Both the position numbers and the translations under genes were made by a program. The notes under the pieces were generated by a model. That model was not told the DNA's origin and did no database searches. It saw nothing but the letters and a program-made list of their open reading frames with translations. A stretch of DNA of 63,923 bases, filler included, from Octopus bimaculoides (Eukaryota): assembly GCF_001194135.2 (NCBI RefSeq). It is 6 parts of 5 records of this genome, joined end to end, with 100 filler letters (N's around TTAATTAATTAA, not from the genome) between each part and the next. Parts side by side here need not be neighbours in the genome. Positions count along the whole stretch, not along the records: positions 1 to 19,791 come from NC_068997.1; 5 more parts are not named here. One strand, given 5' to 3'. Positions within the stretch are counted from its first letter, which is position 1. Every line of letters begins with the position of its first letter. Positions 351 to 20,135 of this stretch are shown here, in pieces.

Positions 351-836
351 TCAGGAAGCCAGTGTGTAAAAATATTCATAAGGGAAATTTCTATTCCCAA
401 GAATATAATTATTCGCTTATATTTATATAAGGGCATTACTACAGAATAATGCCACACACTGTAAAGACAGACAAAATGCCGCTAAGCATTTCGCCCAGCG
501 GGCTAACGATTCTGCCAGCTCAACGCCTTACTACTACTACTACTAAGTTAAGAACAAAAACAACCAAATGATGATGGTGCTTGATTTTGAAGTCATTAGG
601 ACGTAGAATACCTTGTAGTATGTGTAGGCGATTGTCGAGTAAAATACTAGGGTACATTCATCGATTTGATTGCTGAATTAAGAACCATAAAGGACAAAAT
701 TATAATTATTATTATAATTAAGATTTCTTTATTAGACTCAAGAACAACTTTAAAATCAGTACATTAAGAGAGCTTTTATATGCGTATGTGTACATCTATA
801 CATGTATGATTATACACAGACACACACACACACATA

Positions 837-891
<55 letters not shown>

Positions 892-1225
892 NNNNNNNNN
901 NNNNNNNNNNNNNNNNNNNNNNNNNNNNNNNNNNNNNNNNNNNNNNNNNNNNNNNNNNNNNNNNNNNNNNNNNNNNNNNNNNNNNNNNNNNNNNNNNNNN
1001 NNNNNNNNNNNNNNNNNNNNNNNNNNNNNNNNNNNNNNNNNNNNNNNNNNNNNNNNNNNNNNNNNNNNNNNNNNNNNNNNNNNNNNNNNNNNNNNNNNNN
1101 NNNNNNNNNNNNNNNNNNNNNNNNNNNNNNNNNNNNNNNNNNNNNNNNNNNNNNNNNNNNNNNNNNNNNNNNNNNNNNNNNNNNNNNNNNNNNNNNNNNN
1201 NNNNNNNNNNNNNNNNNNNNNNNNN

Positions 1226-1297
<72 letters not shown>

Positions 1298-2069: not shown

Positions 2070-3380
2070 ACCATCAGTAATACCCGTCGTTGATCGGGTA
2101 ATTACTTTTCCTGTTTCTCGGGCCGGAAAGCTAGAAAAATGGGTAATATCATATAAAAGAATAGCTTTACGGAATCCAGATGACTGCGATGGCACTGAAC
2201 AGGCTACAGACCAAGTGGAACATCACTGTTCATATAGGAAAAGCATTGCACGTCCTGAGTTTGTTTGGTGTTCACTTTTTGACGGTCTTTGTTTAGTAGA
2301 CATTTTTTTATTAGGTATATCAGTAATAGTGAAATGAATATACAAATGCTGTGTCCTGTCAGTGTTAGTGCTAAAATTCCAACGTTATATTATAGGCATG
2401 GAAGGCAAGGCAACAATAAGTTGTGAAATTACAAATGCTGTGTCCTGTCAGTCAGATTTAGGTTTACTCGTCCCGTATTATATAAGAAAAAACCATGTAA
2501 TAATTGAAGTAGAAAAAAGATGGATTTCATATACGAACTTCTGTTTGTTCTTCAAGTAGCATTCCAGCAACTTTTAGTGTTTGGCATTGACTTTTATTAA
2601 TGCACATATCAGAACCGAGAAGCTAGAAAAATGGGCATATCATATAGAAGAATTGCTTTACGGAATCCAGGGAGCTGCGATGGCATTGAAAAGGCTGCAG
2701 GTCAAGTGGAACATCAGTGTTCCTCACTCTTCCTTTTGACGTTTGAATAGGCGGTATATCGTGAATGAAGCTAGAAGAATAGCCATATCATATAGAAGAA
2801 TAGCTTTAGGAAATGCAGGAGACTGTGCGATGGCACTGGGAAGGCCACGGATTAAGTGGGAGACCCATTTGTCACGGTTTCTTTTGACATATGAATAAGC
2901 ATATGCCCAAGCAGAATTGAAAGATTCAGGTTCGAATCTGAAGCAGGGGGAGACTACGACTACAGATTTATGTTTGCGCGTGTCTCATCCTCATTTTGTG
3001 CAGCCCGTCGTGCGTTTGTTTGGTGTTCGTTTCTTGACAGCCTTTTTTTTTTTTCGTAGACACTTTTTGATTAGAAATATCAGTGAGAAATAGTGAAATG
3101 AAATTACAAATACTGTGTCCTGTCAGTGTTAGTGCTGAAATTCCGACGCGATATTACAAGCATGGAAACCAAGGCAACAGGAAGTAATAGTCCAATGGAA
3201 TTAAAAATGTTGTGTCCTGTCAGTCAATTTAGGTTTACTAGTCTTGTATAAGTGTATTATATAAGATAAAACATAATAAATGAAGTAGAAAAACGATGAA
3301 TCTCATATACGAACTTTTGTTTGTTCTTCAAGTTGCAATCCAGCAACTTTTAGTGTTTGGCCCTGACTTTAATAAATGCT
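2070..3380. repeat. Imperfect tandem duplication, offset about 755-775 bp
   Basis: Block about 2258-2600 recurs at about 3013-3372. Block GCTAGAA.AAT.G...ATCATATA.AAGAAT.GCTTTA occurs three times (2130, 2622, 2770). Confidence 0.85.
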
Positions 3381-3590
3381 CATGGCAAAAGAAAGTGGGA
3401 TAGGAAATTGTAAGGACTCAAATTTTAATGAGACATTAGATGTTACAACTGGTATGCAAGGAACGGTGGCGATGCTGCATTTACCACAACCAGTGAGAAT
3501 ATTCGCCTCAATGCAGTTCGGCATAGGTTTGTGCACAACTAGTGTTGCCTTCCTTGAAACATTTGCTTTTATTGTTATGGGACAAACAAA
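3320..3590 (-). mobile_element. Helitron Pif1-like helicase C-terminal fragment
   Basis: The minus strand reads MPNCIEANILTGCGK...IPVVTSNVSLKFESLQFPIPLSFAMSIY*SQGQTLKVAGLQLEE. This matches the Helitron RepHel motif QFP(V/I)RL.FAM(S/T)INKSQGQTL. A second copy (INKSQCQTLKVAGMLLEE) lies at about 2545-2602. Confidence 0.85.
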
Positions 3591-3672: not shown

Positions 3673-4415
3673 NNNNNNNNNNNNNNNNNNNNNNNNNNNN
3701 NNNNNNNNNNNNNNNNNNNNNNNNNNNNNNNNNNNNNNNNNNNNNNNNNNNNNNNNNNNNNNNNNNNNTATACATACATATATATAAATATATATGTGCA
3801 TATATGTACATATATACATGTATATGCATATATGTATTCGCGTATAGCCTAATACACTCATATATACGGATGTAGGTATTTACGTGAGAACATGTTTGCA
3901 CGTGTATGTACGATGCACTCTAAAAACTAAATCAAAACAAAAAATCAAGAAGAAAAAGCAACAAACAACAAGAAAATTCAGGTATGCGCAAATATAACTA
4001 ATTTTTATTAGATAATGAGTGTCAGCAAGGATTGTACCCAGTCTTGTTGCGTTGAATTCCCTCGGAGCCTTTCAATTTCAAATAGCAGCATAGTTTCGTA
4101 CTGTTTCACATACATATATATNNNNNNNNNNNNNNNNNNNNNNNNNNNNNNNNNNNNNNNNNNNNNNNNNNNNNNNNNNNNNNNNNNNNNNNNNNNNNNN
4201 NNNNNCTTACATACATATAAAGTTTCACATAATTTTAGATAATATATGTATATATGTGTGTATGTATATTTATGTATGTATATATACACGTATATATATA
4301 CATATGTCTATATGTATGTATGAATGTATGTATATATATGTATTATATAGAAGGTTCATATTGCTATGTAAGCGGAAAAGAGGATATAATATTATTTTTA
4401 CATGACTATATATAA

Positions 4416-5331
4416 TTAGTTTAGTTCAGTTATATCATGTGGCGGGTGATCTGTAGATTCTTTACGTTTTCTTGAGCATAATTTCCGTGCACTTTCTTTT
4501 ATAGTGGCATCAAAAAGCCACAAAAACGACATCATCAAGAAGCTGACAAAATGAGAGTAACGGTAAATGATGAACGTCTGATAATCGAATGGCGGAAAAA
4601 CTCCCAGTTCAAATAAGTTTTGTTGAAGATAAGAAATGAAAACCAAAATAACAACAATAATTAATGTTCTTAAAGGGGATTTCATCATCTCACATTGTTT
4701 ACCTTTGATAGCAATATAGATCAACAAGCCAATATACACTAACATTGTTATCATCATCAATATTGCGAATGTAGCCATGATTGTTATGAAATTACTATTT
4801 ATATCAATATCGCATCTCTTTGGATTAAATACGGAGCATGCTTGAAACATTACCAATCCTTTTACCCAGAGAAAGGCCCACAAAATCCCTGTCACTGCGT
4901 ACTGGATAATTAGAAATTTCTGACTTTCATATTTGCTAGGTTGAAAGTATTTCACGATAAAATCACAGCAAATAGGTAATAAGAAATATTTAGACCCTTC
5001 GTCTAGAACATTATGAGTCATAAATATAAATGCACAGGCTGGAGTTGGCAAATATGGGAACAGGTGGATATGTATATTCTCGAAATAAACGAACAAGGTA
5101 AACAATGCAAAGTTAAACATATAGTTCAGCAACGACAGAGAGCGCGTTTTTCCATGAGATTTACGATCTAGGAAAATGGCGATCATTAGAAATGCATTGG
5201 TCAGGATAACTAAGATGATCGAGACACATAAATATATTCAACCGCCCGAATGTATTATTTGCGAAGACTGAAAATTTTGGGGTATAATCGTAGTCGTAGT
5301 TATAATCTACAGTCACTTGTAAATCTTCCAT
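4416..5331 (-). pseudogene. Frameshifted divergent 7TM GPCR-like gene, paralogue of 10339-11244
   Basis: The 256-aa ORF (4416-5186) aligns with TM1-end to C-terminus of the paralogue. An upstream ATG at 5331 encodes MEDLQVTVDYNYDYDYTPKFSVFANNTFGRLNIF in another frame. Codon alignment shows a 2-nt deletion near 5229-5230. Confidence 0.8.
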
Positions 5332-7904
5332 CTTGTGTTTTGAGCAGTTTGAATTGTCTCAAATCTGAAATGGAGATAATAAGATAAATAAAGAAACCAA
5401 CGGGTTAAATTTTTTTCTTTATATACTGATAATGGTAACTGAAATAGTTGTAACTATAATTTTAGAGAGATGCTAAGGAATAATAAATAGTAGCAACTAT
5501 GCCAAACGTAGGATCTGTTGTTACAATAACGATGTATGTGTGTAGCCAATCACAACTGTATTGTTCTGGATTCCGTTTGTCTCAATAAACGACAGAAAAC
5601 ATTTCAGAAGTCATGCGATGAAGAAATGTCTGTTTTGGAATAGTTTCCATAATGTTAAGATATGCATGGAAGTCAAATATAGCATTGAAATCTTTCATGA
5701 AGCATAATGCCATATGGCTTAGTAGAGGAAAAATGAAATTAACATTTAGAAAATAATGTACTAAACGTACTTGCGGATGATGCAGTACAATTTGTGGTGA
5801 GATTTTTCTTTCAGAAAAATCTATGGACGTAATGAAAATGAGTGTCTTCTCGGTTAAGCAAATTTTACAATTCAAATATGAGAGAAAAGTGTCAGACGAG
5901 ATAATTTTGTCGAAAACAATGGTATTTCCTGATCTTTTGCCGGAAATATGCTGGAACTTAGGAGAAAAATGCACCACCTCGGCAAGTGAAGAAATGGCAA
6001 CCGGTTGAATGAAAAAAGAATAAAATAAAAAGATCTCTAGAAAGTCTGAAACATCATCTAAATATCTTTAAGAAAGAACTTAATATCATTGTATACCTTT
6101 AATATATAGAACATTTCGTTAGACAGATCCAAAGGAGTTGTATGGTATGAATAAAGCATATATAACGTACTTTTTTATGACATGGCGAATGCTACACATA
6201 CAGCTATATAAAAAAGACGCTAAAGAAATCACCACTATCCTCATAAGATATATATATATATATATATANNNNNNNNNNNNNNNNNNNNNNNNNNNNNNNN
6301 NNNNNNNNNNNNNNNNNNNNNNNNNNNNNNNNNNNNNNNNNNNNNNNNNNNNNNNNNNNNNNNNNNNNNNNNNNNNNNNNNNNNNNNNNNNNNNNNNNNN
6401 NNNNNACTCCTGGGAATTACTTGTGTGGGTACCGTCTTCGTTAGAAGGTAACCAGAGGCAGGTAATTTATTGTTTAAACCGCAGTTTATAATTATAGTTA
6501 TGTGGAGAATGGAGAAACAAACACAAGAAGAAGCAAGTCAACTGGGCTAGTTAGCCATTGATTTAATTATGTGGAGCTTATATAATGAGTCATTTACGTA
6601 CGATTCGATGTGCCAAATGGTTTGGTAGATCTCTTCAGAATGTTGAGGAGTATGTTAGAGTTCATGGTGTGAGAGATGCAGGAGAAACAATTAGTGGATA
6701 TATTAATGCATGTGGTGGTATAAGAATAGCATTAGGTAAAGTTAGTCTTACATTTTAGTTGAAGTTGTGTTAGTCTGTCTCGAAGGGGAGGTAGGGTGGG
6801 TGCTATTTAAGCTCGTAGTTCCAATCTTAATCAGATGCATTCCGCACGTGCTTGTTTTTAGAATTGAGGCGTGTGTCTTTTACTTTTAGCACCGGCGGTG
6901 TTAGTAAAGGGGAGTAACCCTAAGTTTTGGTGAAGAGGGAGCTAACTCTGATCTTATTAATATTTAATTATAATTAATTATACTTAGAAAAAGAAAATTC
7001 TTTTTTGCATATTTAATTATGCTTAGGAAGTGGAATGCATTACATATTTAATTATACTTAGAAAATGAGTATTTAGTAGCGTGTAGACAAATTAGGCTAC
7101 GTTCATATCTTTTGTTTAAGAGATCCTTATTAGCCGTTAGGATTTTGAGGCGTTCAGTTAGACAGAGGTCACAGCGTCTGTTTGTTGGGTTATGAGAATT
7201 AGCTGCTTTTAGTATGTGCCACTTTAGTTTATATTCTATTTTATTTCCTTTAATTCCCAGATATAGCTACTAAGTCCTGTTGAATTTGCCTTTTTTCTAT
7301 TTCTAAAGCTAGATTGGTGCTCATTATATCTGAGGCCTATTTGGTTTTTCGTAGCGCCGATGTAAGATTTAATATGGTTGTTTGTGTGTATTACGGCAAC
7401 ATCGACAATAAAAACAAGCTTAAAATGTGAATAATTGAATAAACAATTGCCCTTATTTTCAAAAGTATTTTCAAATTTTTTTTATTATATGTTAGAATCA
7501 TCTGGAAATACAAGCAGTCGAAATATAGTTTTGACATTCCATATAATATTGATAAATAAATTACATGCAAGTAGTCTTTTAATGGTGATCAACCAATCGG
7601 CAGCCATATTTTGTACTGTAGTTTATATCATTAGATCATAAGGAAGAAAAGAATTGAAGAACTGCTAGTTTAAAGAAGGGGACGATAGCTCGGGAATCAT
7701 AGATGAACAATATCTGATTTATGTTTGAAAAGACGTACATCAGACATTAATATGTGATTATAATCTTTATACTGATTTAAAGAAATGCCAACAATTGAAA
7801 AATGTATTGATATTAAAAGTTTTTTGTTTGCAAGGTAGCTCGCTGTCTTAATGATAATAATTCTTTCTACTACAGGCACAATATCTGAAATTTTTGGGGA
7901 AAGG

Positions 7905-8072
7905 AAAAGTTGATCACATCGATCCCAGTACTTGACTGGCACTTAATTTATCGACCCCGAAAGGATGAAAGCTCGGTCGACTTGGCGTAACTTGAACTCA
8001 GAGCGTAAAGACAGTCGAAATACCACTAAACATTTCACCCAGTGTGCAAACGACTCTACCAGTTCATCGCCT
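7905..8072 (-). mobile_element. tRNA-derived SINE, family A
   Basis: Carries the family core TTCAAGTT..GCC.AGTCGAC....CTTTCATCCTTTCGGGGTCGATAAATTAAGT.CCAG shared with the copies at 33045, 49.6-50.4 kb, 61883 and 63640. Confidence 0.8.
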
Positions 8073-8076
8073 TATA

Positions 8077-8121
<45 letters not shown>

Positions 8122-8709
8122 CATTATTATGTTTTTTTTTCTTCTTTCTTCAAATTTTCTTCCATTTCTCGCCGAGTGTTTTCCGTACACCTAGGGCAGA
8201 GAAACTCGTTGTATGCATTCCCAGTTTACACACGCAAATTCACAGGTAAAATATGTATTTAAAAAAAAAATTCATGAATGGATGTTGTTTTCACAGCGAT
8301 AATGCTCTTCTCANNNNNNNNNNNNNNNNNNNNNNNNNNNNNNNNNNNNNNNNNNNNNNNNNNNNNNNNNNNNNNNNNNNNNNNNNNNNNNNNNNNNNNN
8401 NNNNNNNNNNNNNNNNNNNNNNNNNNNNNNNNNNNNNNNNNNNNNNNNNNNNNNNNNNNNNNNNNNNNNNNNNNNNNNNNNNNNNNNNNNNNNNNNNNNN
8501 NNNNNNNNNNNNNNNNNNNNNNNNNNNNNNNNNNNNNNNNNNNNNNNNNNNNNNNNNNNNNNNNNNNNNNNNNNNNNNNNNNNNNNNNNNNNNNNNNNNN
8601 NNNNNNNNNNNNNNNNNNNNNNNNNNNNNNNNNNNNNNNNNNNNNNNNNNNNNNNNNNNNNNNNNNNNNNNNNNNNNNNNNNNNNNNNNNNNNNNNNNNN
8701 NNNNNNNNN

Positions 8710-8849
<140 letters not shown>

Positions 8850-9404
8850 ATGCCCTGTTACAGTAGCAGGCAGTGGGTTTTATGGCTTCTCATCTTAACT
8901 GATTGGAAGTGTTATCATGTATATTGTTTTGTCTTGGTATAAAAGATGGACTACAGCAAATATTCTGCTCAATACCACAGATTTGTTTGTCACGTGTTTG
9001 ACCTTAACCATTTGAGCATGTCCCTTGGTGGCTGACGATATGTGCATCTCTGATCACGAGCAGAAGTAGTGAGGGGGCATCATAGCCAAGTGTTGAGAAG
9101 AATTCTTTGGGGTTTGGATAATTCCCCCTTGGAAATATGGGTGTTTTGTTCAACATCCTTAAACAACCCTTATTCAGAGTCCTTTTGAGCGGGACGGGCT
9201 ACTCAACCTGAAGAAAATTCTAATTGGGCCCCACCTGCAAGGCCATGCGCTGTTAATCTTGATATGAGATCACCATGTTGCGCACATATGGTTATGATGC
9301 ATGCGCCTGGTGTACCCTTATCAGACGGGTAGTCATGATGGGTATACTGGGCTTCGTATATTTTACCCCAGTGTCACTTTGATAGCATGCACTGCTCTCT
9401 GACA
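8850..9404. mobile_element. About 555-bp interspersed element embedded in triplet/TAA repeats
   Basis: A more GC-rich island with no clear ORF, bounded by (AAT)n(AGA)n on the left and (AAT)n at 9405-9430. It resembles a common octopus repeat (recalled, not searched). Confidence 0.5.
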
Positions 9405-9429
9405 CAATAATAATAATAATAGTAATGAT

Positions 9430-9774
9430 AACTTAAAATCGCTGAATATCTTCAAAATTTCTCCTGCGATTTCAAACTTCCTGAAGCACAACATGGTCAA
9501 TGTGGAATACGAATGTCCAATAATACTACTCTAATGGAGTACTGACCAGAAAAATATTAATATCAACTGCGGTATTTTCCAAGGTGACTCACTTTCACCT
9601 TTAATTTTCTACATAGCCCTTACAAGTGAACTTAACAGAACAAGGTATGGACATAAAAATGGCGACAAGAAAATAAGTCATCTATTTTATATGGATGACT
9701 TAAAACTCTATGGCAAAACGATAATGAGCTCAAGGACTACTAAATAATTTAAATAAAAATATATACATACATAC

Positions 9775-9805
<31 letters not shown>

Positions 9806-9823
9806 AATGTATATATACATATA

Positions 9824-9880
<57 letters not shown>

Positions 9881-10190
9881 ATACATATGTATATATAAAT
9901 ATGTATATATAGATAGATAATATAAAAGCTTTATGTGACAAATGAGAAGCAGCTTGAAAGTCTACATACTGTTCGCATTTTCTCAAATGATGTCGATATG
10001 GAATTTGGGATTGAAAGTGCACTGTATTGATAATGAAACGAGGAAGATTTGAAGAACGTCAAGAAATTGAAGTGCCAAATGGGCGAACAATGAAAGCAGT
10101 TGGTGAAGGACAGTGGTATAAGTATTTGGGAATAATGGATGCAGATAAAATAAAACATGAAGAGATGAAGCAATTGCCAGTAAAATGAGG
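9430..10190 (+). mobile_element. R4/Dong-like (RLE) non-LTR retrotransposon RT fragments split by a microsatellite
   Basis: INCGIFQGDSLSPLIF...KISHLFYMDDLKLYGK at about 9560-9720. LKLYVTNEKQLESL-HTVRIFSNDVDMEFGIE...MKRGR...YKYLGI at about 9922-10140. Confidence 0.8.
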
Positions 10191-10338
10191 AAAATATTAC
10201 AAAGTTGAATTTAAAAAATGCTATTGAAGCAATAAATTGATAAAATATTTACAGGGCTATATAAGCTGATATATTGCATGCAGACTTACGAGATACTCGT
10301 AAGTAGATATAATACATTTTTTACATCGCTTTATGTGA

Positions 10339-11244
10339 CTAATTAAGTTCAGTAGTTAACTCATGTGACGGAGGGCGTATAGGTTTTTTACATTTCCCTG
10401 AATATAATTTCCGAATACTTTGTCTTATAGTAACATCAAAAAGCAATAGAAATGGTACTATTACAAATCTTATCAAATTTAATAAAAGGGGTACGTAAAG
10501 AATAGTGATTTGTATTATTCCATACAGTCCAACAAACACAATGGTTTCAGCAGAGTATAAGGTTATGACGAATATAACAATAACAATCATAGTTATTAAT
10601 GACAATTTCATCGTATCATTTTCTCTACTTTTCACTGCGATGTAGATCAGTAGACATACAAGTACCAACATTGTAACAATATACAAGCTTTCTATGGCTA
10701 AATGGATACAAAGGGAAATGAAATGTAAGAATATATAGCATTGGTCAACTCCGTAATCTGAGAAAGCTAGAATCATTAATAATTCTTTGATCCAGATAAA
10801 AACCCACAAAACAACTGTGAATATAATCTGGGTACGCAGAAAACTGTGACTTTCATATTTGCTTGGTTTAAAGTATTTCACAATAAAATCACAGCAAATA
10901 GGAAGTATGAAATACAGAGCAGCGTCGTTAGTAACGGAAGTTAGTATAATAATAAATAAGCAGGTAGACTGAGGTAAATCTGTAAATATATGAATATGTA
11001 CGTTGTGGAAATAAAAGAACAAGGCAAACAGCGTGTAGTTAAACATATAGTTCAGTAATAAGAAAGAGCGTGTTTTCCCATAGGCTCCACGATCTAGAAA
11101 AATGGCAGTCGTTAACAATGCGCTGAACAGGAATATTACGATGGTTGCAACACAAGCAGATAAATTCACCCAGATAGATGAAGAGGGTTCAGTGAATGTA
11201 GAATTGTACTCATAATAATAATAATACTCTGGATAGTTTTCCAT
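10339..11244 (-). CDS. Intact single-exon divergent 7TM receptor, class A GPCR-like orphan, 301 aa
   Basis: Seven hydrophobic segments and a short Tyr-rich N-terminus with an NST sequon. Cys at the TM3 start and in ECL2 (QSTC / DQC), TM4 Trp, a TM3-end/ICL2 pattern ICCDFIVKYFKPSKY at the DRY...P..Y position, and a helix-8-like TIRQSIRKLY. Confidence 0.85.
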   Translation of the reverse strand: MENYPEYYYYYEYNSTFTEPSSSIWVNLSACVATIVIFLFSALLTTAIFLDRGAYGKTRSFLLLNYMFNYTLFALFFYFHNVHIHIFTDLPQSTCLFIIILTSVTNDAALYFILPICCDFIVKYFKPSKYESHSFLRTQIIFTVVLWVFIWIKELLMILAFSDYGVDQCYIFLHFISLCIHLAIESLYIVTMLVLVCLLIYIAVKSRENDTMKLSLITMIVIVIFVITLYSAETIVFVGLYGIIQITILYVPLLLNLIRFVIVPFLLLFDVTIRQSIRKLYSGKCKKPIRPPSHELTTELN

Positions 11245-12964
11245 GTTGCATTGGCCAGAATTGCTTCAAACCTGAAATGGAGACAAATTTCAATAAAAGG
11301 GATCACATGAAATCATTTGCATGAAACTAATTTGAAACATTTCAACCTATCGTGGTTTGTTTTAATTACGAGCTACAGTTTCAATTCATCAATGAATCTT
11401 CTGAAATATTTAGATTCTTCATCTGTATTACAGTTTGGAAGTTATTTAAAAAAGTTTGATCAAATAACTAACATATCATTCAACTACAGTAGTAGTTGAA
11501 TAACATTCTTAAGGCCATAATTTACTCACACGCAGCATCTTCAGAGCTTTGTTGCTAATTTAGTTCTTAAACAAATTGAAAACTGTTAACATTTTTGAAG
11601 AGAACTGGTCCCTAGCTACATTTTAGCATAAATAATTGAGATTTGGTCCAGTAGAAAAAAGTTTGCATCAAACTTTGTAGCAACGTTATACGAGAGTAAG
11701 TAACTCCTCCAGTTTAGTTCTAAATAACATTTTTGTATTTTAAACGCAAAATATATTATCTTAGCTTCAATGATAGAAGAAAGCATGTGGAATTTCATAC
11801 ATTTGGTCTCATGCAACAAAAATTTGTATAAAAAATGTTGTGAGGTAAAATATCACGAAAAAATATAAGCAAGGCAAAAAGTTGGATTTAAGTATAATTA
11901 ACTTTTTTTATTTAAAAAATAAACTATATTTTAATTAAGCTTAAATGATAGAAATAAATTCGAGGAAATTCATGGTATCAATTTCATTTAGTGAAGTTTT
12001 AAAAGAAATAAATTATGAGTGTTTGTTTTTTTTTATGAATATAGTTCTATAAGGGGACTTTTAATATATGCCAACGGCATCATTGAGGTAATTTTCAATA
12101 AGGTAAAATCTTAAATTATTAATTGACATATTAATTAGCATAATAAATATTGGCTGTATATTACTAATAATAATAATAATGATAGCAATAATAATGGGAC
12201 CCTGAGGAGATGGAGTATCCTATATTTTATAATATTTTATAATATGTATTAATCATTCTGGATGTTCCATCGAAATGTACATAGGTCAATTTCATTATTA
12301 TTATTATTATTGTTGTTGTTGTTGTTGCAATAAAGTATTTTCAACGGATCAGTTTTGAGCTCTATTTAAAGTTGATATATATATACATATATATATGTAT
12401 ATATACATATGTGTGTATACACACACACACACACACACACACATATATGTATATATACATTTGTATATATATATATGCCATCCATTTTTATTTTATTTTA
12501 TTTTATATTGTATATTGTATATTATATTATATATTGTATATTCCATATTCTATACCCCACATTAGTTCTGCAGGAATATAAATAAAACAAAAAACAGACA
12601 GTGTTGGAACTCTTTTAANNNNNNNNNNATATATAACGTGAGAGAGTTAGGGGTTGGGGGTTCAACCCACTAAGGGATAGTATCTATCCAGTATACTGCT
12701 GGGAGGGTACCCAATTATTGCTACACTAGTGCTATACTAGGTGCAATCAATGGGAGCGGGTAAAAGCGGAGGTTTTACCCAAAATTTGTATAACAATTAG
12801 AAAATGGAGGATAATATGCTGAACCCAACTACTTGCAGACGGTGTATCCCGTTGAATTCATTAATCTAATCCATAGCAAAAGTGACAAAAAAAGAAAGAA
12901 AAGGAAAGAAAGAACCAAAATATATATATGTATATATTTTTATTTAAATTATTTAGAATTTATT

Positions 12965-14925
12965 CAAAAATGTTTCTGCTTGAAAGCTGCGGTCATGCTG
13001 TGGCACCACCGTTGAATGAGCTACACCATTATTTGGAACCTCGTCTGATATGTGGTATTTGGTCAATGAGGGAATTTGATGCTGCTGCTCTCATCTGTGT
13101 TTCCTGCCGTGAGGTAGGCTCGTCTGGAACCCTTGACTGGAAGAGATCCAGTTTTGTTTTAAAGACACTTACATCCACACCATGCAGGTCTCTTAGGCAT
13201 TTTCGAAGGATATTAAAGAGCTGTGGGCCCTTGAAGCCCAAGCTGTTGCAGTATCTGGTCCTGTATTTTGATGGCGATGCTAGGAACTTTAGCACTCTGC
13301 AGCGGCGCCTCGTTCTACAGTTTGAGTAACTTTCAATCCCAAAGTTTGGTACAAGGCCTTCTAGGATTTTCCAGATGTTTATCACTGCATATCTCTCCCA
13401 CCTTCGTTGCAGGAAGAAGAGTTTTAATTCTTTCAGTCTTTCTCAGTAGCTGATACGTTGCATCGAGACGACTTTCTTAGTGTAGCTTCGTTGGATTGCT
13501 TCGAGTTCCACCGTGGATTTTATATTGTGTGGTGACCATAGTTGGGAGCAGTAGTCCAAGGGGCTGAGGACGTATGTCCTCCAGAGGATCATCAATGTCT
13601 CCTTTTCTCTTGTTTTGAAAGTTCGGAGGATCCATCCAACCAGCCGTATGCATTTTATTACCAAATTGGTAATATGCACTTGAAAAGATGCATCATTGCT
13701 CATGTCAATGCCCAGGTCACATACTGATTTTGATTCAGGGATTTCAATTCCTCCTGGGCCAGTGTATCCTGTATGCATGTCGTTTAGCTTTGTGTGCTGG
13801 TAGTGTAGAGTCTGGAATTTTCCTGCATTAAACTGCATGTTGTCCTCAGCCCACCTGTATATTGAGTCCAACTCTCGTTGCAGATGTGCAATATTTCCAG
13901 GATTTTGTATTGCCTGAGAAACTTTTGTATCATCTGCCTAGCTAGTAAGGGTGGCTCTCTGAGCAGCCGAGGGCATGTCTGAGAGGGCCACTATGAGACG
14001 GCCCCAAGACAGTGCGTTGTGGAACATCACTTGCTATTTGTGTTTCCTTGGATGTGGCTCCATTGGCCACTACTGACTGACGTCTAGCTTTTAGAAAGCC
14101 GTGCAGCCACTCTCCAAGTCTTCCGCCAATGCCAAGACCACGCAGTTTGTTACATATCATACCATGGTCGACTTTGTCAAAGGCTTTTGCAAAGTTGAGA
14201 TGTATCACAGCTGCTCTTGAGTCATTCAGCAGCTGTCTTAACACCCAGTCGTAGTGTTGCAGGAGCTGTGTTATACAGATGCTACCTGGTCGAAATCCAT
14301 GCTGGGTGTCAATCAGCAAGTCATTTTCTTCTAGGAACGCGATTAGTTTCTTGCGGACTATTCGTTCCACGACTTTACTGATGTGTGAAGTCAGAGTGAT
14401 AGGCCTATAATTTTTAGCATCTGCTCTACTTCCTCCTTTATGAATAGGGCATATTATCCCTTCCTTCAGATTGTCTGGGAGCTTACCATTTGCAAGGAAG
14501 CTCTGGAAGAGAAGCTGCAGTGGTTTTGAGTAGGACCGCTGGAAATCCATCCGGACCAGCAGCTGAGTTTGTGCCAATCTCATTTATGGCCAGCATTAAA
14601 TCTTCAATGCTTATGCACTCAATTTTTACCTCTTTGGTTTCAGGTGTGGCAAAGAATTCTGCTGGTTTGTTCACTTGCCTGCGTCCCAGTGGTGTAGTGA
14701 ACACACTTTGGAACAGTTCGTTCATTATTTCACTTACCCTCATGGGATTTCCTGTGAGGGAGACATCTTTTTGGAAGAGGGGTTCTATGTTGTGGTGTGT
14801 TGAGGCTGTTTCTTTGGCGAATTTAAAGAAATCATTAGGGTTCGACTTGATATTTTCTATAACCCAAGCTTCTTTGTTTGCTCTCTCCTTTTCATGAGAC
14901 TGATGCAGACTTTTATAAATCTCGC
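12965..14925 (-). mobile_element. CR1/L2-clade LINE, 5'-truncated and degraded, RT plus 3' end
   Basis: ICPIHKGGSRADAKNYRPITLTSHISKVVERIV, QHGFRPG, FAKAFDKVDH, DVPQRTVLGP, YADDTKV-like, DLGI, and YCSQLWSP...LEAIQRSYTK, spread over several frames. Confidence 0.9.
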
Positions 14926-19102: not shown

Positions 19103-19184
<82 letters not shown>

Positions 19185-19304
19185 NNNNNNNNNNAGAAAG
19201 GAATATGGGAATGGAAATCAGTTACATGATTTTAAACGAAGTACAGCAAAATATTGTGACAGACAGTAAAAATAAAAGTTTAGTCGCTATTATAGGTTTT
19301 AATA

Positions 19305-19560
19305 TCAGCCAGTGGACCAAGTTGAAAGGGTTGAAGACTGACATTTTCCTCTTTGGCCGAACCCTCATCAACTTCTTCAAGTTTCACTTGAAAAGGAAAA
19401 TGAAGGTAAGGAGGGAAGTGCTGCCTCCCAGCAATTTTGTTAAAAGGTGAGTGAATGTAGCGCGAATAGCCCGAATGAACGGGTCTATTCTAAGCATGCG
19501 CCTCTAGATCGAGGAGTGGGCACTTTCCCTAGAGGTTAGGGGGATCGTGGTTTCTGTGGA
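19305..19560 (+). mobile_element. Tx1/L1-like ORF2 C-terminal relic, copy 2
   Basis: QWTKLKGLKTDIFLFGRTLINFFKFHLKRKMKVRREVLPPSNFVKR, similar to 16290-16470. Confidence 0.55.
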
Positions 19561-19580
19561 GTTTCCTCAANNNNNNNNNN

Positions 19581-19622
<42 letters not shown>

Positions 19623-20135
19623 GGAGAGAAGGGCAAAGAGAGTGCTGACAGAAAGGAATATGGGAATGGAAATCAGTTACATGATTTTAAACGAAGTACA
19701 GCAAAATATTGTGACAGACAGTAAAAATAAAAGTTTAGTCGCTATTATAGGTTTTAATATCAGCCAGTGGACCAAGTTGAAAGGGTTGAAGNNNNNNNNN
19801 NNNNNNNNNNNNNNNNNNNNNNNNNNNNNNNNNNNTTAATTAATTAANNNNNNNNNNNNNNNNNNNNNNNNNNNNNNNNNNNNNNNNNNNNTCGGGTTAA
19901 AATTTCATCAACATCAAAAATATATGAATTTTCATGGGAGTTATGGCCGTTATGCATAGAATATAATTTCCAAATTTCATAAAGATCCATTCAGTACTTT
20001 TGACGTAGTTTTGGATAAGAAAACAAATGACTAATGTGTGTGTTTGTGTGCATGTGTTTGTGTGTGATGGGTGTATATATGTATAGATATCTGTATGCAT
20101 GTATATATATGTATATATGTGTACATATAACATGT

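What the first reader, a model, noticed from the sequence alone, without database searches (positions are those of the whole stretch)
4416..11273. Tandem pair of highly divergent single-exon orphan 7TM receptors: a possible lineage-specific chemosensory or peptide receptor cluster
Seen: two co-oriented paralogues about 6 kb apart. They are strongly similar across TM1-ICL2 (AIFLDR...GKTRS..LLNYMFN, YF.LPICCDFIVKYF.PSKYES), much more diverged in ECL2 and TM5-7, and both end in ...TELN*. Known: class A GPCRs have the TM3-ECL2 disulfide, TM4 Trp and helix 8 seen here. Intronless tandem arrays with variable ligand pockets are typical of chemoreceptor birth-and-death evolution. Inference: this is part of an orphan cephalopod receptor expansion of unknown ligand, and the best candidate for an undescribed system in this window.
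Basis: partly seen in the sequence, partly recalled or inferred. Interest (0 to 1): 0.8.

Follow-up and report, generated by a model that had tools for sequence, protein, structure and literature searches.

The report
Octopus-only divergent GPCR-like receptor gene pair
Two neighbouring octopus genes (one intact, one frameshifted in this assembly) belong to a small octopod-only tandem family of very divergent rhodopsin-like receptors that lack the usual G-protein switch motifs; the genes are already predicted in RefSeq, but I found no paper on them and their ligand and function are unknown.

Summary
The window is Octopus bimaculoides chromosome CM046617.1, 260.5-280.3 kb. It carries two co-oriented minus-strand paralogues, 46% identical.

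- **Copy B** (10339-11244, 301 aa) is intact.
- **Copy A** (4416-5331) has a 2-bp deletion in a short TG run in TM1. Only 256 codons from an internal Met stay in frame.
- **Assembly gaps:** both lie between the genes, not inside them.

The genes belong to a family of about 25 proteins, found only in Octopus, Argonauta and a few unnamed assemblies. A profile search of 1.84 billion proteins gave 7 representative clusters. There is no Pfam hit and no PDB sequence hit.

The AlphaFold model (pLDDT 79) matches only class A GPCRs among the top Foldseek hits. A profile-profile alignment gives the canonical register:
- present: TM3-ECL2 cysteines, W4.50, P7.50;
- absent: R3.50 (Phe instead), CWxP, and the N and Y of NPxxY.

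The cytoplasmic face and a C-terminal HELTTE[LI]N motif are conserved. The extracellular half is variable, with dN/dS up to about 1.

The genes are not strictly single-exon. Every CDS is preceded by a conserved splice acceptor, and RefSeq models distant paralogues as isoforms of one locus. A chemosensory role is plausible but untested. I rate it a new variant of a known kind, of moderate interest.

The parts
10339..11244 (-). Copy B: complete CDS (301 aa plus stop) of an octopod-specific class A-like 7TM receptor. It is intact, and its O. sinensis orthologue is P0002 (81% aa identity).
   Evidence: ORF list. An exact protein match places it on O. bimaculoides CM046617.1 270826-271731. AF2 gives 7 TM helices plus H8, pLDDT 79.3. 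The top 50 Foldseek hits are all class A GPCRs, TM-score 0.6-0.71.
11272..11290 (-). Polypyrimidine tract plus AG splice acceptor (tttgtctccatttcag|g), 27 nt upstream of copy B's ATG. The terminal coding exon starts at about 11271.
   Evidence: Sequence. The same motif precedes all nine family CDSs examined, including the most distant one.
4416..5331 (-). Copy A: full-length homologous CDS (ATG 5331-5329, stop 4418-4416) with one frameshift. Its O. sinensis orthologue is P0013 (87% aa identity).
   Evidence: tblastn footprint 4419-5331. The nucleotide alignment to O. sinensis shows it is otherwise intact, with one in-frame 3-nt indel. dN/dS vs the orthologue is 0.39, Fisher p=6e-4.
5224..5232 (-). 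Site of the 2-bp deletion in a short TG/AT run inside TM1 of copy A. It puts the N-terminal 34 codons out of frame with the rest.
   Evidence: Alignments to the O. sinensis orthologue and to copy B. The Logan homologue P0017 reads ...NIFMCVSIILVIL... in one frame.
4416..5186 (-). The longest in-frame ORF of copy A as assembled: 256 aa from an internal Met at the end of TM1. It would lack TM1.
   Evidence: This exact 256-aa product is not in the protein collection.
5365..5380 (-). Polypyrimidine tract plus AG splice acceptor (attatctccatttcag|a), 33 nt upstream of copy A's ATG.
   Evidence: Sequence. It is conserved in the O. sinensis orthologue.
10339..10365 (-). Codons for the conserved C-terminal motif of copy B (SHELTTELN plus stop).
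   Evidence: The family alignment has HELT(T)E[LI]N/S/E at the extreme C-terminus in Octopus, Argonauta and the ENA member.
4416..4442 (-). Codons for the conserved C-terminal motif of copy A (PHDITELN plus stop).
6269..6405 (.). Assembly gap in the intergenic spacer. It lies in the interval where O. sinensis has 17.5 kb more sequence, including paralogue P0007. Continuity across it is not established.
   Evidence: N runs. blastn synteny: window 7452 matches O. sinensis 16472708, and the next match is window 5602 to 16490184. P0007 lies at 16476801-16477703.
8314..8709 (.). Assembly gap in the intergenic spacer, flanked by (TAA)n. Order and orientation on both sides agree with O. sinensis.

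Best explanation
These are two adjacent members of a small, octopod-restricted, tandemly duplicated family of highly derived rhodopsin-like (class A fold) 7TM receptors. The O. bimaculoides array has at least six co-oriented copies over about 65 kb.

Shown:
- Each protein is about 300 aa. It has a short glycosylatable N-terminus, seven helices, an ECL2 beta-hairpin tied to TM3 by the canonical cysteine pair, W4.50, P7.50, helix 8, and a short tail ending in a conserved HELTTE[LI]N motif.
- The whole CDS sits in one exon, and that exon is preceded by a conserved 3' splice site.
- The cytoplasmic half is conserved across paralogues and under purifying selection. This covers ICL1 DR..K.R, the TM3-ICL2 motif LPICCDFIVKYF.PSKYE, helix 8 and the C-terminal motif.
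- The extracellular half evolves at or near the neutral rate.
- The canonical class A activation switches are absent: R3.50 (Phe instead), CWxP, N7.49 and Y7.53. By a weaker single-sequence alignment, D2.50 (Ala instead) is absent too.

Inferred:
- The family works as a set of receptors that share one intracellular partner or output but differ in the extracellular ligand they recognise. That is a chemoreceptor-like, environment- or conspecific-facing repertoire evolving by birth and death.
- Coupling may be non-canonical.
- The CDS exons are probably spliced to upstream non-coding leader exon(s). RefSeq shares these leaders between paralogues.

Copy B is a functional gene. Copy A is either a very recent pseudogene or the victim of a 2-bp assembly error.
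For: **Identity and restriction**
- The exact protein sits on O. bimaculoides CM046617.1.
- Homologues are found only in O. bimaculoides, O. sinensis, Argonauta hians and unnamed Logan/ENA contigs.
- An exhaustive HMMER profile search of 1.84e9 representatives returns 7 clusters and nothing else at E<=1e-3.

**Array**
- O. bimaculoides copies lie at about 295, 286, 271, 265, 238 and 231 kb, all on the same strand.
- The O. sinensis array is syntenic.

**Fold**
- AF2 gives pLDDT 79.3 and pTM 0.77, with 7 TM helices plus H8.
- Foldseek finds 833 PDB hits at E<=1e-3. The top 50 are all class A GPCRs, TM-score 0.6-0.71.

**Sequence homology to class A**
- hhalign against a rhodopsin/beta2AR/A2A profile gives probability 78.6% and E=1.7e-5 over 209 columns in canonical register.
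- UniProt gives the family the PROSITE family-1 profile name.

**Selection**
- Column entropy is 1.33 bits in the cytoplasmic halves and 2.0 bits in the extracellular halves (p=3e-10).
- dN/dS is 0.2-0.53 in the cytoplasmic half and 0.4-1.08 in the extracellular half.
- A vs its orthologue gives omega 0.39, p=6e-4.

**Splice acceptor and leader exon**
- The acceptor is conserved in all nine CDSs examined.
- RefSeq joins CDSs up to 58 kb apart as isoforms of LOC106869328. It does the same for LOC115220942 and LOC115220941 in O. sinensis.
Against: - No expression, ligand or signalling data were available, so the chemoreceptor-like role rests on evolutionary pattern alone.
- No member has a Pfam 7tm_1 hit, and there is no PDB sequence hit at E<=10. 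The hhalign probability is only 78.6%.
- Whole-gene dN/dS for copy B vs its orthologue is 0.82, not significantly below 1 (p=0.49).
- With R3.50, CWxP and NPxxY missing, G-protein signalling is uncertain.
- The family is small, about 7-9 genes per species, compared with typical chemoreceptor repertoires.
- Most O. bimaculoides and O. sinensis copies are one-to-one orthologues, so turnover is modest.
- The shared-leader inference rests on RefSeq isoform names, not on reads I could inspect.
Confidence: 0.7

Rival explanations
1. They are receptors for endogenous peptides or neuromodulators, expanded in octopods, and not exteroceptive chemoreceptors.
For: - The ECL2 beta-hairpin and short N-terminus in the AF2 model are typical of peptide-binding class A receptors.
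- Foldseek hits include opioid, somatostatin, chemokine and C3a receptors.
- Mostly one-to-one orthology between the two Octopus species.
- The family is small.
Against: - There is no detectable relationship to any bilaterian peptide-receptor family, even with a profile against 1.84e9 proteins.
- Extracellular-half dN/dS is near 1.
- The activation motifs that neuropeptide GPCRs conserve are lost.
- Foldseek shows no preference for any subfamily.
Confidence: 0.2
2. They are 7TM proteins of GPCR descent that no longer signal through G proteins. They could be arrestin-only or decoy receptors, trafficking or accessory subunits, or constitutively active scaffolds.
For: - R3.50 is Phe/Ile/Tyr/Val/Leu in every member.
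- There is no CWxP, and NPxxY is replaced by [VL]PF[LA][WL]. D2.50 is Ala in the alignment.
- The cytoplasmic surface and the acidic/Thr-rich C-terminal HELTTE[LI]N motif are strongly conserved. This suggests a dedicated, possibly non-G-protein, partner.
Against: - Other divergent chemoreceptor GPCRs, such as vertebrate T2Rs and nematode Sr families, also lack these motifs yet signal through G proteins. This is from my own knowledge and was not tested here.
- The variable extracellular pocket argues that ligand recognition still matters.
Confidence: 0.15
3. The pair is non-functional: decaying duplicates that the annotation pipeline strings together as spurious 'isoforms'.
For: - Copy A is frameshifted.
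- Copy B's whole-gene dN/dS is 0.82, not significantly below 1.
- No canonical AATAAA lies within about 730 nt of B's stop.
- The 256-aa product of copy A is absent from protein databases.
Against: - Full-length ORFs of about 300 codons are kept in an AT-rich genome in both Octopus species for all other copies.
- Cytoplasmic-half dN/dS is 0.2-0.53.
- Family-wide invariant residues persist out to Argonauta and a member only 26% identical.
- The splice acceptors are conserved.
- Copy A's dN/dS is 0.39, so any inactivation is very recent.
Confidence: 0.05

Closest known systems
Class A (rhodopsin-like) GPCRs, Pfam PF00001 / PROSITE PS50262
   Same: - Seven-helix fold plus helix 8 (Foldseek TM-score 0.6-0.71 to A2A, SSTR3, LPA1, H4, opioid and chemokine receptors).
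- The C3.25-ECL2 cysteine pair, W4.50, the ICL2 Pro and P7.50 in canonical register.
- Cys after helix 8 in most members.
- N-terminal N-glycosylation sequons.
   Different: - No Pfam 7tm_1 match in any member.
- R3.50 is replaced by Phe (DRY becomes C-D-F-I).
- No CWxP.
- N7.49 and Y7.53 are absent.
- D2.50 aligns to Ala.
- No affinity to any named subfamily.
- Found only in octopods.
Aplysia candidate chemoreceptors AcCRa-c (Cummins et al. 2009, PMC2700072)
   Same: - A mollusc lineage-specific family of rhodopsin-like 7TM proteins.
- Very low identity to anything else.
- Short N-terminus.
- CDS largely without introns.
- Multigene families that include pseudogenes with frameshifts.
   Different: - The AcCRs keep the conserved Arg at the cytosolic end of TM3. 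This family does not.
- No detectable sequence relationship: no non-cephalopod hit.
- The octopod family is much smaller (about 7-9 genes vs 90).
- No expression data exist for the octopod genes.
Cephalopod- and octopus-specific GPCR expansions (Ritschard et al. 2019, PMC6408891; Nath et al. 2025, PMC11886862)
   Same: Tandem clusters of lineage-specific GPCR paralogues in O. bimaculoides, with elevated dN/dS. The concept is the same.
   Different: - Ritschard et al. collected GPCRs by Pfam PF00001/2/3/PF01534 signatures, which this family does not match.
- Their octopus-specific groups are class B.
- Nath et al. report that their lineage-specific sets keep DRY and NPxxY.
- I could not check whether these genes are in either dataset, because no supplements are held.
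Octopus chemotactile receptors (CRs; cited in PMC11886862 as van Giesen 2020 and Allard 2023)
   Same: A cephalopod-restricted, tandemly expanded sensory receptor repertoire. They are the established contact chemoreceptors of octopus suckers.
   Different: CRs are nicotinic-receptor-like pentameric ligand-gated channels (from my own knowledge). That is an unrelated fold, and the genes here are 7TM.
Clustered receptor loci that use alternative exons with shared exons (protocadherin and UGT1A clusters, insect Gr genes such as Gr28b/Gr39a, and occasional shared 5' UTR exons among mammalian OR genes; all recalled from memory, not tested)
   Same: One annotated locus yields several different receptor proteins by joining a shared exon to one of several tandem variable exons.
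   Different: Here the arrangement would be the mirror image: shared non-coding 5' leader(s) joined to alternative terminal exons that each hold a complete CDS. It is supported only by RefSeq isoform names and by conserved acceptors.

Membership tests
Class A (rhodopsin-like) GPCR | Seven transmembrane helices with an extracellular N-terminus, plus amphipathic helix 8 | tested here: met
   AF2 DSSP helices: 21-50, 57-86, 92-125, 133-160, 175-205, 210-241, 250-267, and H8 at 271-285. N-x-S/T sequons occur in the N-terminus. This holds for copy B. Copy A as assembled loses TM1 to a frameshift.
Class A (rhodopsin-like) GPCR | Significant match to the Pfam 7tm_1 (PF00001) HMM or a clan member | tested here: not met
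   No 7tm family at E<=10 for any of 14 members. The family profile has no PDB sequence hit at E<=10.
Class A (rhodopsin-like) GPCR | Profile-level sequence homology to bona fide class A receptors | tested here: inconclusive
   hhalign against a 3-sequence rhodopsin/beta2AR/A2A profile gives probability 78.6% and E=1.7e-5 over 209 columns in canonical register. The probe sequences were checked against PDB. UniProt applies the PROSITE family-1 profile name.
Class A (rhodopsin-like) GPCR | Structural similarity to solved class A receptors | tested here: met
   Foldseek against PDB gives 833 hits at E<=1e-3. The top 50 are all class A, TM-score 0.6-0.71. An independent first model gave the same picture. 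Both models are predictions.
Class A (rhodopsin-like) GPCR | Conserved Cys3.25-ECL2 Cys pair and Trp4.50 | tested here: met
   C95, C169 and W147 are invariant in 20 sequences. They align to rhodopsin C110, C187 and W161.
Class A (rhodopsin-like) GPCR | E/DRY motif with Arg3.50 | tested here: not met
   D119-F120-I121 aligns to E/D-R-Y. Position 3.50 is F, I, Y, V or L in every member, never R or K.
Class A (rhodopsin-like) GPCR | CWxP in TM6 and NPxxY in TM7 | tested here: not met
   The TM6 columns aligned to C-W-x-P read L-Y-S-A in copy B and are variable across the family. TM7 reads [VL]-P-F-[LA]-[WL], so only P7.50 is kept.
Class A (rhodopsin-like) GPCR | Ligand-dependent heterotrimeric G-protein activation | not testable with these tools
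   Needs heterologous expression and signalling assays.
Birth-and-death chemoreceptor repertoire | Lineage-restricted tandem array with copy gain or loss between close species, and pseudogenes | tested here: inconclusive
   The tandem array is confirmed. O. sinensis P0006 and P0007 have no counterpart in the syntenic O. bimaculoides sequence examined, but an assembly gap lies at the P0007 position. Copy A's frameshift may be real or an assembly error. Most copies are one-to-one orthologues.
Birth-and-death chemoreceptor repertoire | Variable, fast-evolving ligand-facing half alongside a conserved signalling half | tested here: met
   Entropy is 2.0 vs 1.33 bits, p=3e-10. dN/dS is 0.4-1.08 in the extracellular half and 0.2-0.53 in the cytoplasmic half across six pairs.
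Birth-and-death chemoreceptor repertoire | Expression in chemosensory epithelia (sucker, olfactory organ, lips) | not testable with these tools
   No RNA-seq access. No paper mentions these loci or accessions.
Aplysia AcCR candidate chemoreceptors | Detectable homology to AcCR subfamilies, and a conserved Arg at the cytosolic end of TM3 | tested here: not met
   No gastropod protein appears among the hits of the exhaustive profile search. Arg3.50 is absent, whereas it is conserved in the AcCRs.

The most novel reading that the evidence does not exclude
The roughly 65-kb array may be one or two transcription units. In each, a common non-coding leader exon would be spliced, mutually exclusively, to one of several terminal exons that each encode a complete and different receptor. 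That would be a splicing-based way to choose one receptor per transcript, the mirror image of protocadherin and UGT1A clusters. It would serve a Pfam-invisible, octopod-only receptor family that has lost every canonical G-protein activation switch and signals through a dedicated partner that reads the conserved cytoplasmic face and the HELTTE[LI]N tail.
Probability: 0.2. Interest if true: 0.75.

Novelty: new variant of a known kind. Interest (0 to 1): 0.45.

Why it matters
Octopus chemosensation is currently explained mainly by the nicotinic-like chemotactile receptors. Surveys report few lineage-specific class A GPCRs in cephalopods (PMC11886862), and at least one survey selected GPCRs by Pfam signature (PMC6408891). 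That method cannot see this family.

An octopod-restricted receptor family with a conserved cytoplasmic face, a diversifying outer half and none of the usual activation switches would matter in three ways:
- it would be an additional candidate sensory or recognition repertoire;
- it would be a natural test of how far a class A scaffold can drift and still signal;
- if the shared-leader architecture is real, it would be an unusual model of receptor choice by alternative terminal-exon splicing.

If the genes turn out to be lowly expressed orphans, this is simply another lineage-specific GPCR cluster.

Tried and rejected
- **Pfam scans** of both window proteins and of all 14 family members at E<=10 gave only spurious small TM families (TgpA_N, FixQ, DUF6768) and no 7tm family.
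- **Family profile vs all PDB sequences** at E<=10 gave nothing.
- **hhalign vs rhodopsin alone** gave probability 0.4%, although the register was sensible. It only became informative with a 3-receptor profile.
- **A second word-indexed homologue search** with a wider alignment added no members. A third, with the most distant member P0018, found one unnamed Logan relative.
- **The taxon of ENA contig L005** could not be determined. It shares no repeats with the Octopus loci.
- **Literature search** by locus and UniProt accessions gave no papers. The supplements of PMC11886862 are not held.
- **Search for extra copies or fragments** in the window by tblastn with all family proteins found only the two copies.
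- **Search for a paralogous proximal promoter or leader exon** found none. Similarity between paralogues stops 75-140 nt upstream of the ATG.
- **Poly(A) signals** downstream of the stops were uninformative.
- **Rfam** gave no hits in the window.
- **The other long ORFs** in the window are translations of microsatellites or gaps, or fragments of a reverse-transcriptase gene.
- **Chemotactile (nAChR-like) receptor identity** was rejected on fold.

Full report
**1. What is in the sequence**

The window has two long minus-strand ORFs.
- Copy B spans 10339-11244 (301 aa).
- Copy A's longest ORF spans 4416-5186 (256 aa).

They are 46% identical (E=8e-73), and both end in ...TELN*. TM1-ICL2 is 62.5% identical and ECL2-TM7 is 28% (p=2e-6).

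The assembly gaps flagged by the scan (6269-6405 and 8314-8709) lie in the spacer between the genes. A third gap, at 4122-4205, lies downstream of copy A's stop. No reading frame touches a gap.

**2. Copy A is frameshifted**

Upstream of copy A's internal Met, the homologous N-terminus (MEDLQVTVDYNYDYDY...) is present from an ATG at 5331, but in another frame.

Alignment to the O. sinensis orthologue and to copy B shows a 2-bp deletion in a short TG/AT run at about 5224-5232, inside TM1. A Logan homologue reads through this site in one frame.

The rest of copy A is intact. Its dN/dS against the orthologue is 0.39, which is significantly below 1 (p=6e-4). The lesion is therefore either very recent or an assembly error. 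The 256-aa product is not in the protein collection.

**3. Not intronless**

A polypyrimidine-AG acceptor (tctccatttcag) sits 27-33 nt upstream of both ATGs.

A similar acceptor lies 5-31 nt before the ATG of all nine family CDSs I examined, including the most distant one. Paralogous DNA similarity stops 75-140 nt upstream of the ATG, and I saw no paralogous proximal leader or promoter.

RefSeq names complete, different CDSs as isoforms of one locus:
- LOC106869328 X1 is the 315-aa copy at about 295 kb, X4 is the copy at about 286 kb, and X2/X3 is the 301-aa copy at about 237.5 kb.
- The same pattern appears in O. sinensis for LOC115220942 and LOC115220941.

This implies shared 5' exon(s) in the transcript evidence, but I could not inspect any reads.

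**4. Genomic context**

The window is Octopus bimaculoides CM046617.1, about 260,488-280,278. The family forms a co-oriented array with copies at about 295, 286, 271 (B), 265 (A), 238 and 231 kb.

The O. sinensis array is syntenic, in the order P0006, P0002 (orthologue of B), P0007, P0013 (orthologue of A), P0012.

Between the B and A orthologues, O. sinensis has 17.5 kb containing P0007. The window has only 1.85 kb there, and that stretch includes the 6269-6405 gap. The true number of paralogues between B and A in O. bimaculoides is therefore uncertain. Order and orientation across the second gap agree with O. sinensis.

**5. Distribution**

- The word-indexed search found 13 proteins. All are from O. 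bimaculoides or O. sinensis, plus two Logan contigs.
- An exhaustive HMMER profile search of 1.84 billion representatives found 7 clusters and nothing else at E<=1e-3. They include Argonauta hians proteins, one ENA contig and Logan contigs of unknown taxon.
- Wider-profile and distant-member searches added only one unnamed sequence.
- In a neighbour-joining tree, the Argonauta proteins group with the conserved 315-aa first gene of the array, which is 94% identical between the two Octopus species. The clade containing A and B has only Octopus and unnamed sequences.

**6. Fold and family**

No member matches any Pfam 7tm model at E<=10. The family profile matches no PDB sequence at E<=10.

Structure prediction does place the family in class A:
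- With 18 sequences, AlphaFold2 gives pLDDT 79.3 and pTM 0.77. The model has seven helices, an ECL2 hairpin and helix 8.
- Foldseek returns 833 PDB hits at E<=1e-3. The top 50 are all class A GPCRs (TM-score 0.6-0.71), with no preferred subfamily.
- A first, shallower model agreed.

I also ran hhalign against a small profile of rhodopsin, beta2AR and A2A. The result was probability 78.6% and E=1.7e-5 over 209 columns. The register is canonical:

| Family residue | Class A position |
|---|---|
| C95 | C3.25 |
| D119-F120-I121 | D/E-R-Y |
| P127 | ICL2 Pro |
| W147 | W4.50 |
| C169 | ECL2 Cys |
| P264 | P7.50 |

Several canonical residues are missing:
- R3.50 is never Arg or Lys in any member.
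- CWxP is absent.
- N7.49 and Y7.53 are absent (Y7.53 is Trp in most members and Leu in B's clade).
- D2.50 aligns to Ala, but only in a weak single-sequence alignment.

The TM1 register (N1.50) is ambiguous, and I make no claim about it.

**7. Selection pattern**

Across 20 sequences, the cytoplasmic halves of the helices are much more conserved than the extracellular halves (1.33 vs 2.0 bits, p=3e-10).

Family-specific conserved blocks are:
- DR at the TM1 end;
- K.R in ICL1;
- LPICCDFIVKYF.PSKYE at TM3-ICL2;
- D.TIRQSIRKL in helix 8;
- a C-terminal HELT(T)E[LI]N motif, which survives even in the member only 26% identical.

Partitioned dN/dS over six orthologous or close paralogous pairs is 0.2-0.53 for the cytoplasmic half and 0.4-1.08 for the extracellular half. 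Whole-gene dN/dS for copy B vs its orthologue is 0.82 and is not significantly below 1. Its cytoplasmic half is at 0.53.

**8. Interpretation**

The evidence supports a real, octopod-restricted family of class A descent. It has a conserved intracellular interface and a diversifying extracellular half.

The most likely mechanism is a set of receptors with different ligands and a common intracellular output. This chemoreceptor-like reading is inferred from the evolutionary pattern, not shown. Because the activation switches are missing, coupling may be non-canonical. A peptide-receptor role and a non-G-protein role remain live rivals. Pure pseudogene decay is unlikely.

**9. Comparison with the literature**

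- Ritschard et al. 2019 collected cephalopod GPCRs by Pfam signature, which this family does not match. Their octopus-specific groups are class B.
- Nath et al. 2025 used broader methods, including 7TM topology plus HHpred. They report few lineage-specific class A genes in cephalopods and retention of DRY and NPxxY in their sets. I could not check whether these genes were included.
- The Aplysia AcCR candidate chemoreceptors are the nearest conceptual analogue, but they keep Arg3.50 and show no detectable homology to this family.
- No paper mentions these loci.

**10. Verdict**

The genes already exist as uncharacterised RefSeq and UniProt predictions, and lineage-specific GPCR clusters are a known phenomenon. 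The motif-less, Pfam-invisible nature of the family and the possible shared-leader, alternative-terminal-exon architecture make it a new variant of a known kind, of moderate interest (0.45).

Noticed in passing
O. bimaculoides CM046617.1 about 231-296 kb (loci L001, L003, L004); O. sinensis CM016875.1 about 16.44-16.50 Mb (L002, L006, L007): RefSeq labels complete, different receptor CDSs lying up to 58 kb apart as isoforms X1-X4 of a single locus. It does so in both species, which implies shared 5' exon(s) spliced to alternative terminal coding exons.
   Followed up: partly
window 5602-7452 (includes gap 6269-6405) vs L006/L002 (O. sinensis 16472708-16490184): O. sinensis has 17.5 kb with an extra paralogue (P0007) between the orthologues of copies B and A, and the window has no counterpart. 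This could be a deletion, an O. sinensis gain, or sequence lost in the assembly gap.
   Followed up: partly
window 13029-14583 (minus strand): A degraded non-LTR retrotransposon. One ORF matches Pfam RVT_1 (E=1.9e-12), and the neighbouring ORFs are broken. A copy 90.6% identical sits at the collinear position in O. sinensis, so the insertion predates the species split.
   Followed up: partly
window 8772-9431: A dispersed repeat. Copies 85-92% identical occur in inverted orientation in L004, L006 and L007, near other family members.
   Followed up: no
window 814-1297, 3673-3768, 4122-4349, 8072-8850, 19107-19194, 19571-19629: The assembly gaps I checked abut microsatellites: (AC)n/(AT)n, ATATATGT-type units, (TAA)n/(AAG)n and (AG)n. 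Several of the 'long ORFs' in the mechanical list are translations of these repeats and N runs.
   Followed up: yes
window 2248-3383 and 19123-19791: Local direct repeats: 2248-2607 vs 3003-3383 (80%), a 148-nt tandem unit at 2619-2897, and 19123-19336 vs 19581-19791 (92%).
   Followed up: no
window 4241-5927 vs L002 (O. sinensis 16497012-16498626): Copy A's upstream flank, about 600 nt beyond the ATG, is 75% similar to the flank of paralogue P0012. Its match to its own orthologue P0013 stops about 270 nt upstream. This may reflect a flank exchange or a repeat insertion.
   Followed up: no
L005 1930-2844 (ENA ERZ21867824 contig ctg66120l): The most distant family member (P0018, 26% identical to copy B) keeps the splice acceptor, the cysteine pair, W4.50 and the HELTTDIS tail.
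   Followed up: partly
L003 989-1936 (O. bimaculoides, about 295 kb): The first gene of the array (315 aa) is by far the most conserved between the two Octopus species (94%, vs 76-88% for the others). It is the one that groups with the Argonauta proteins, so it may be the ancestral member.
   Followed up: partly
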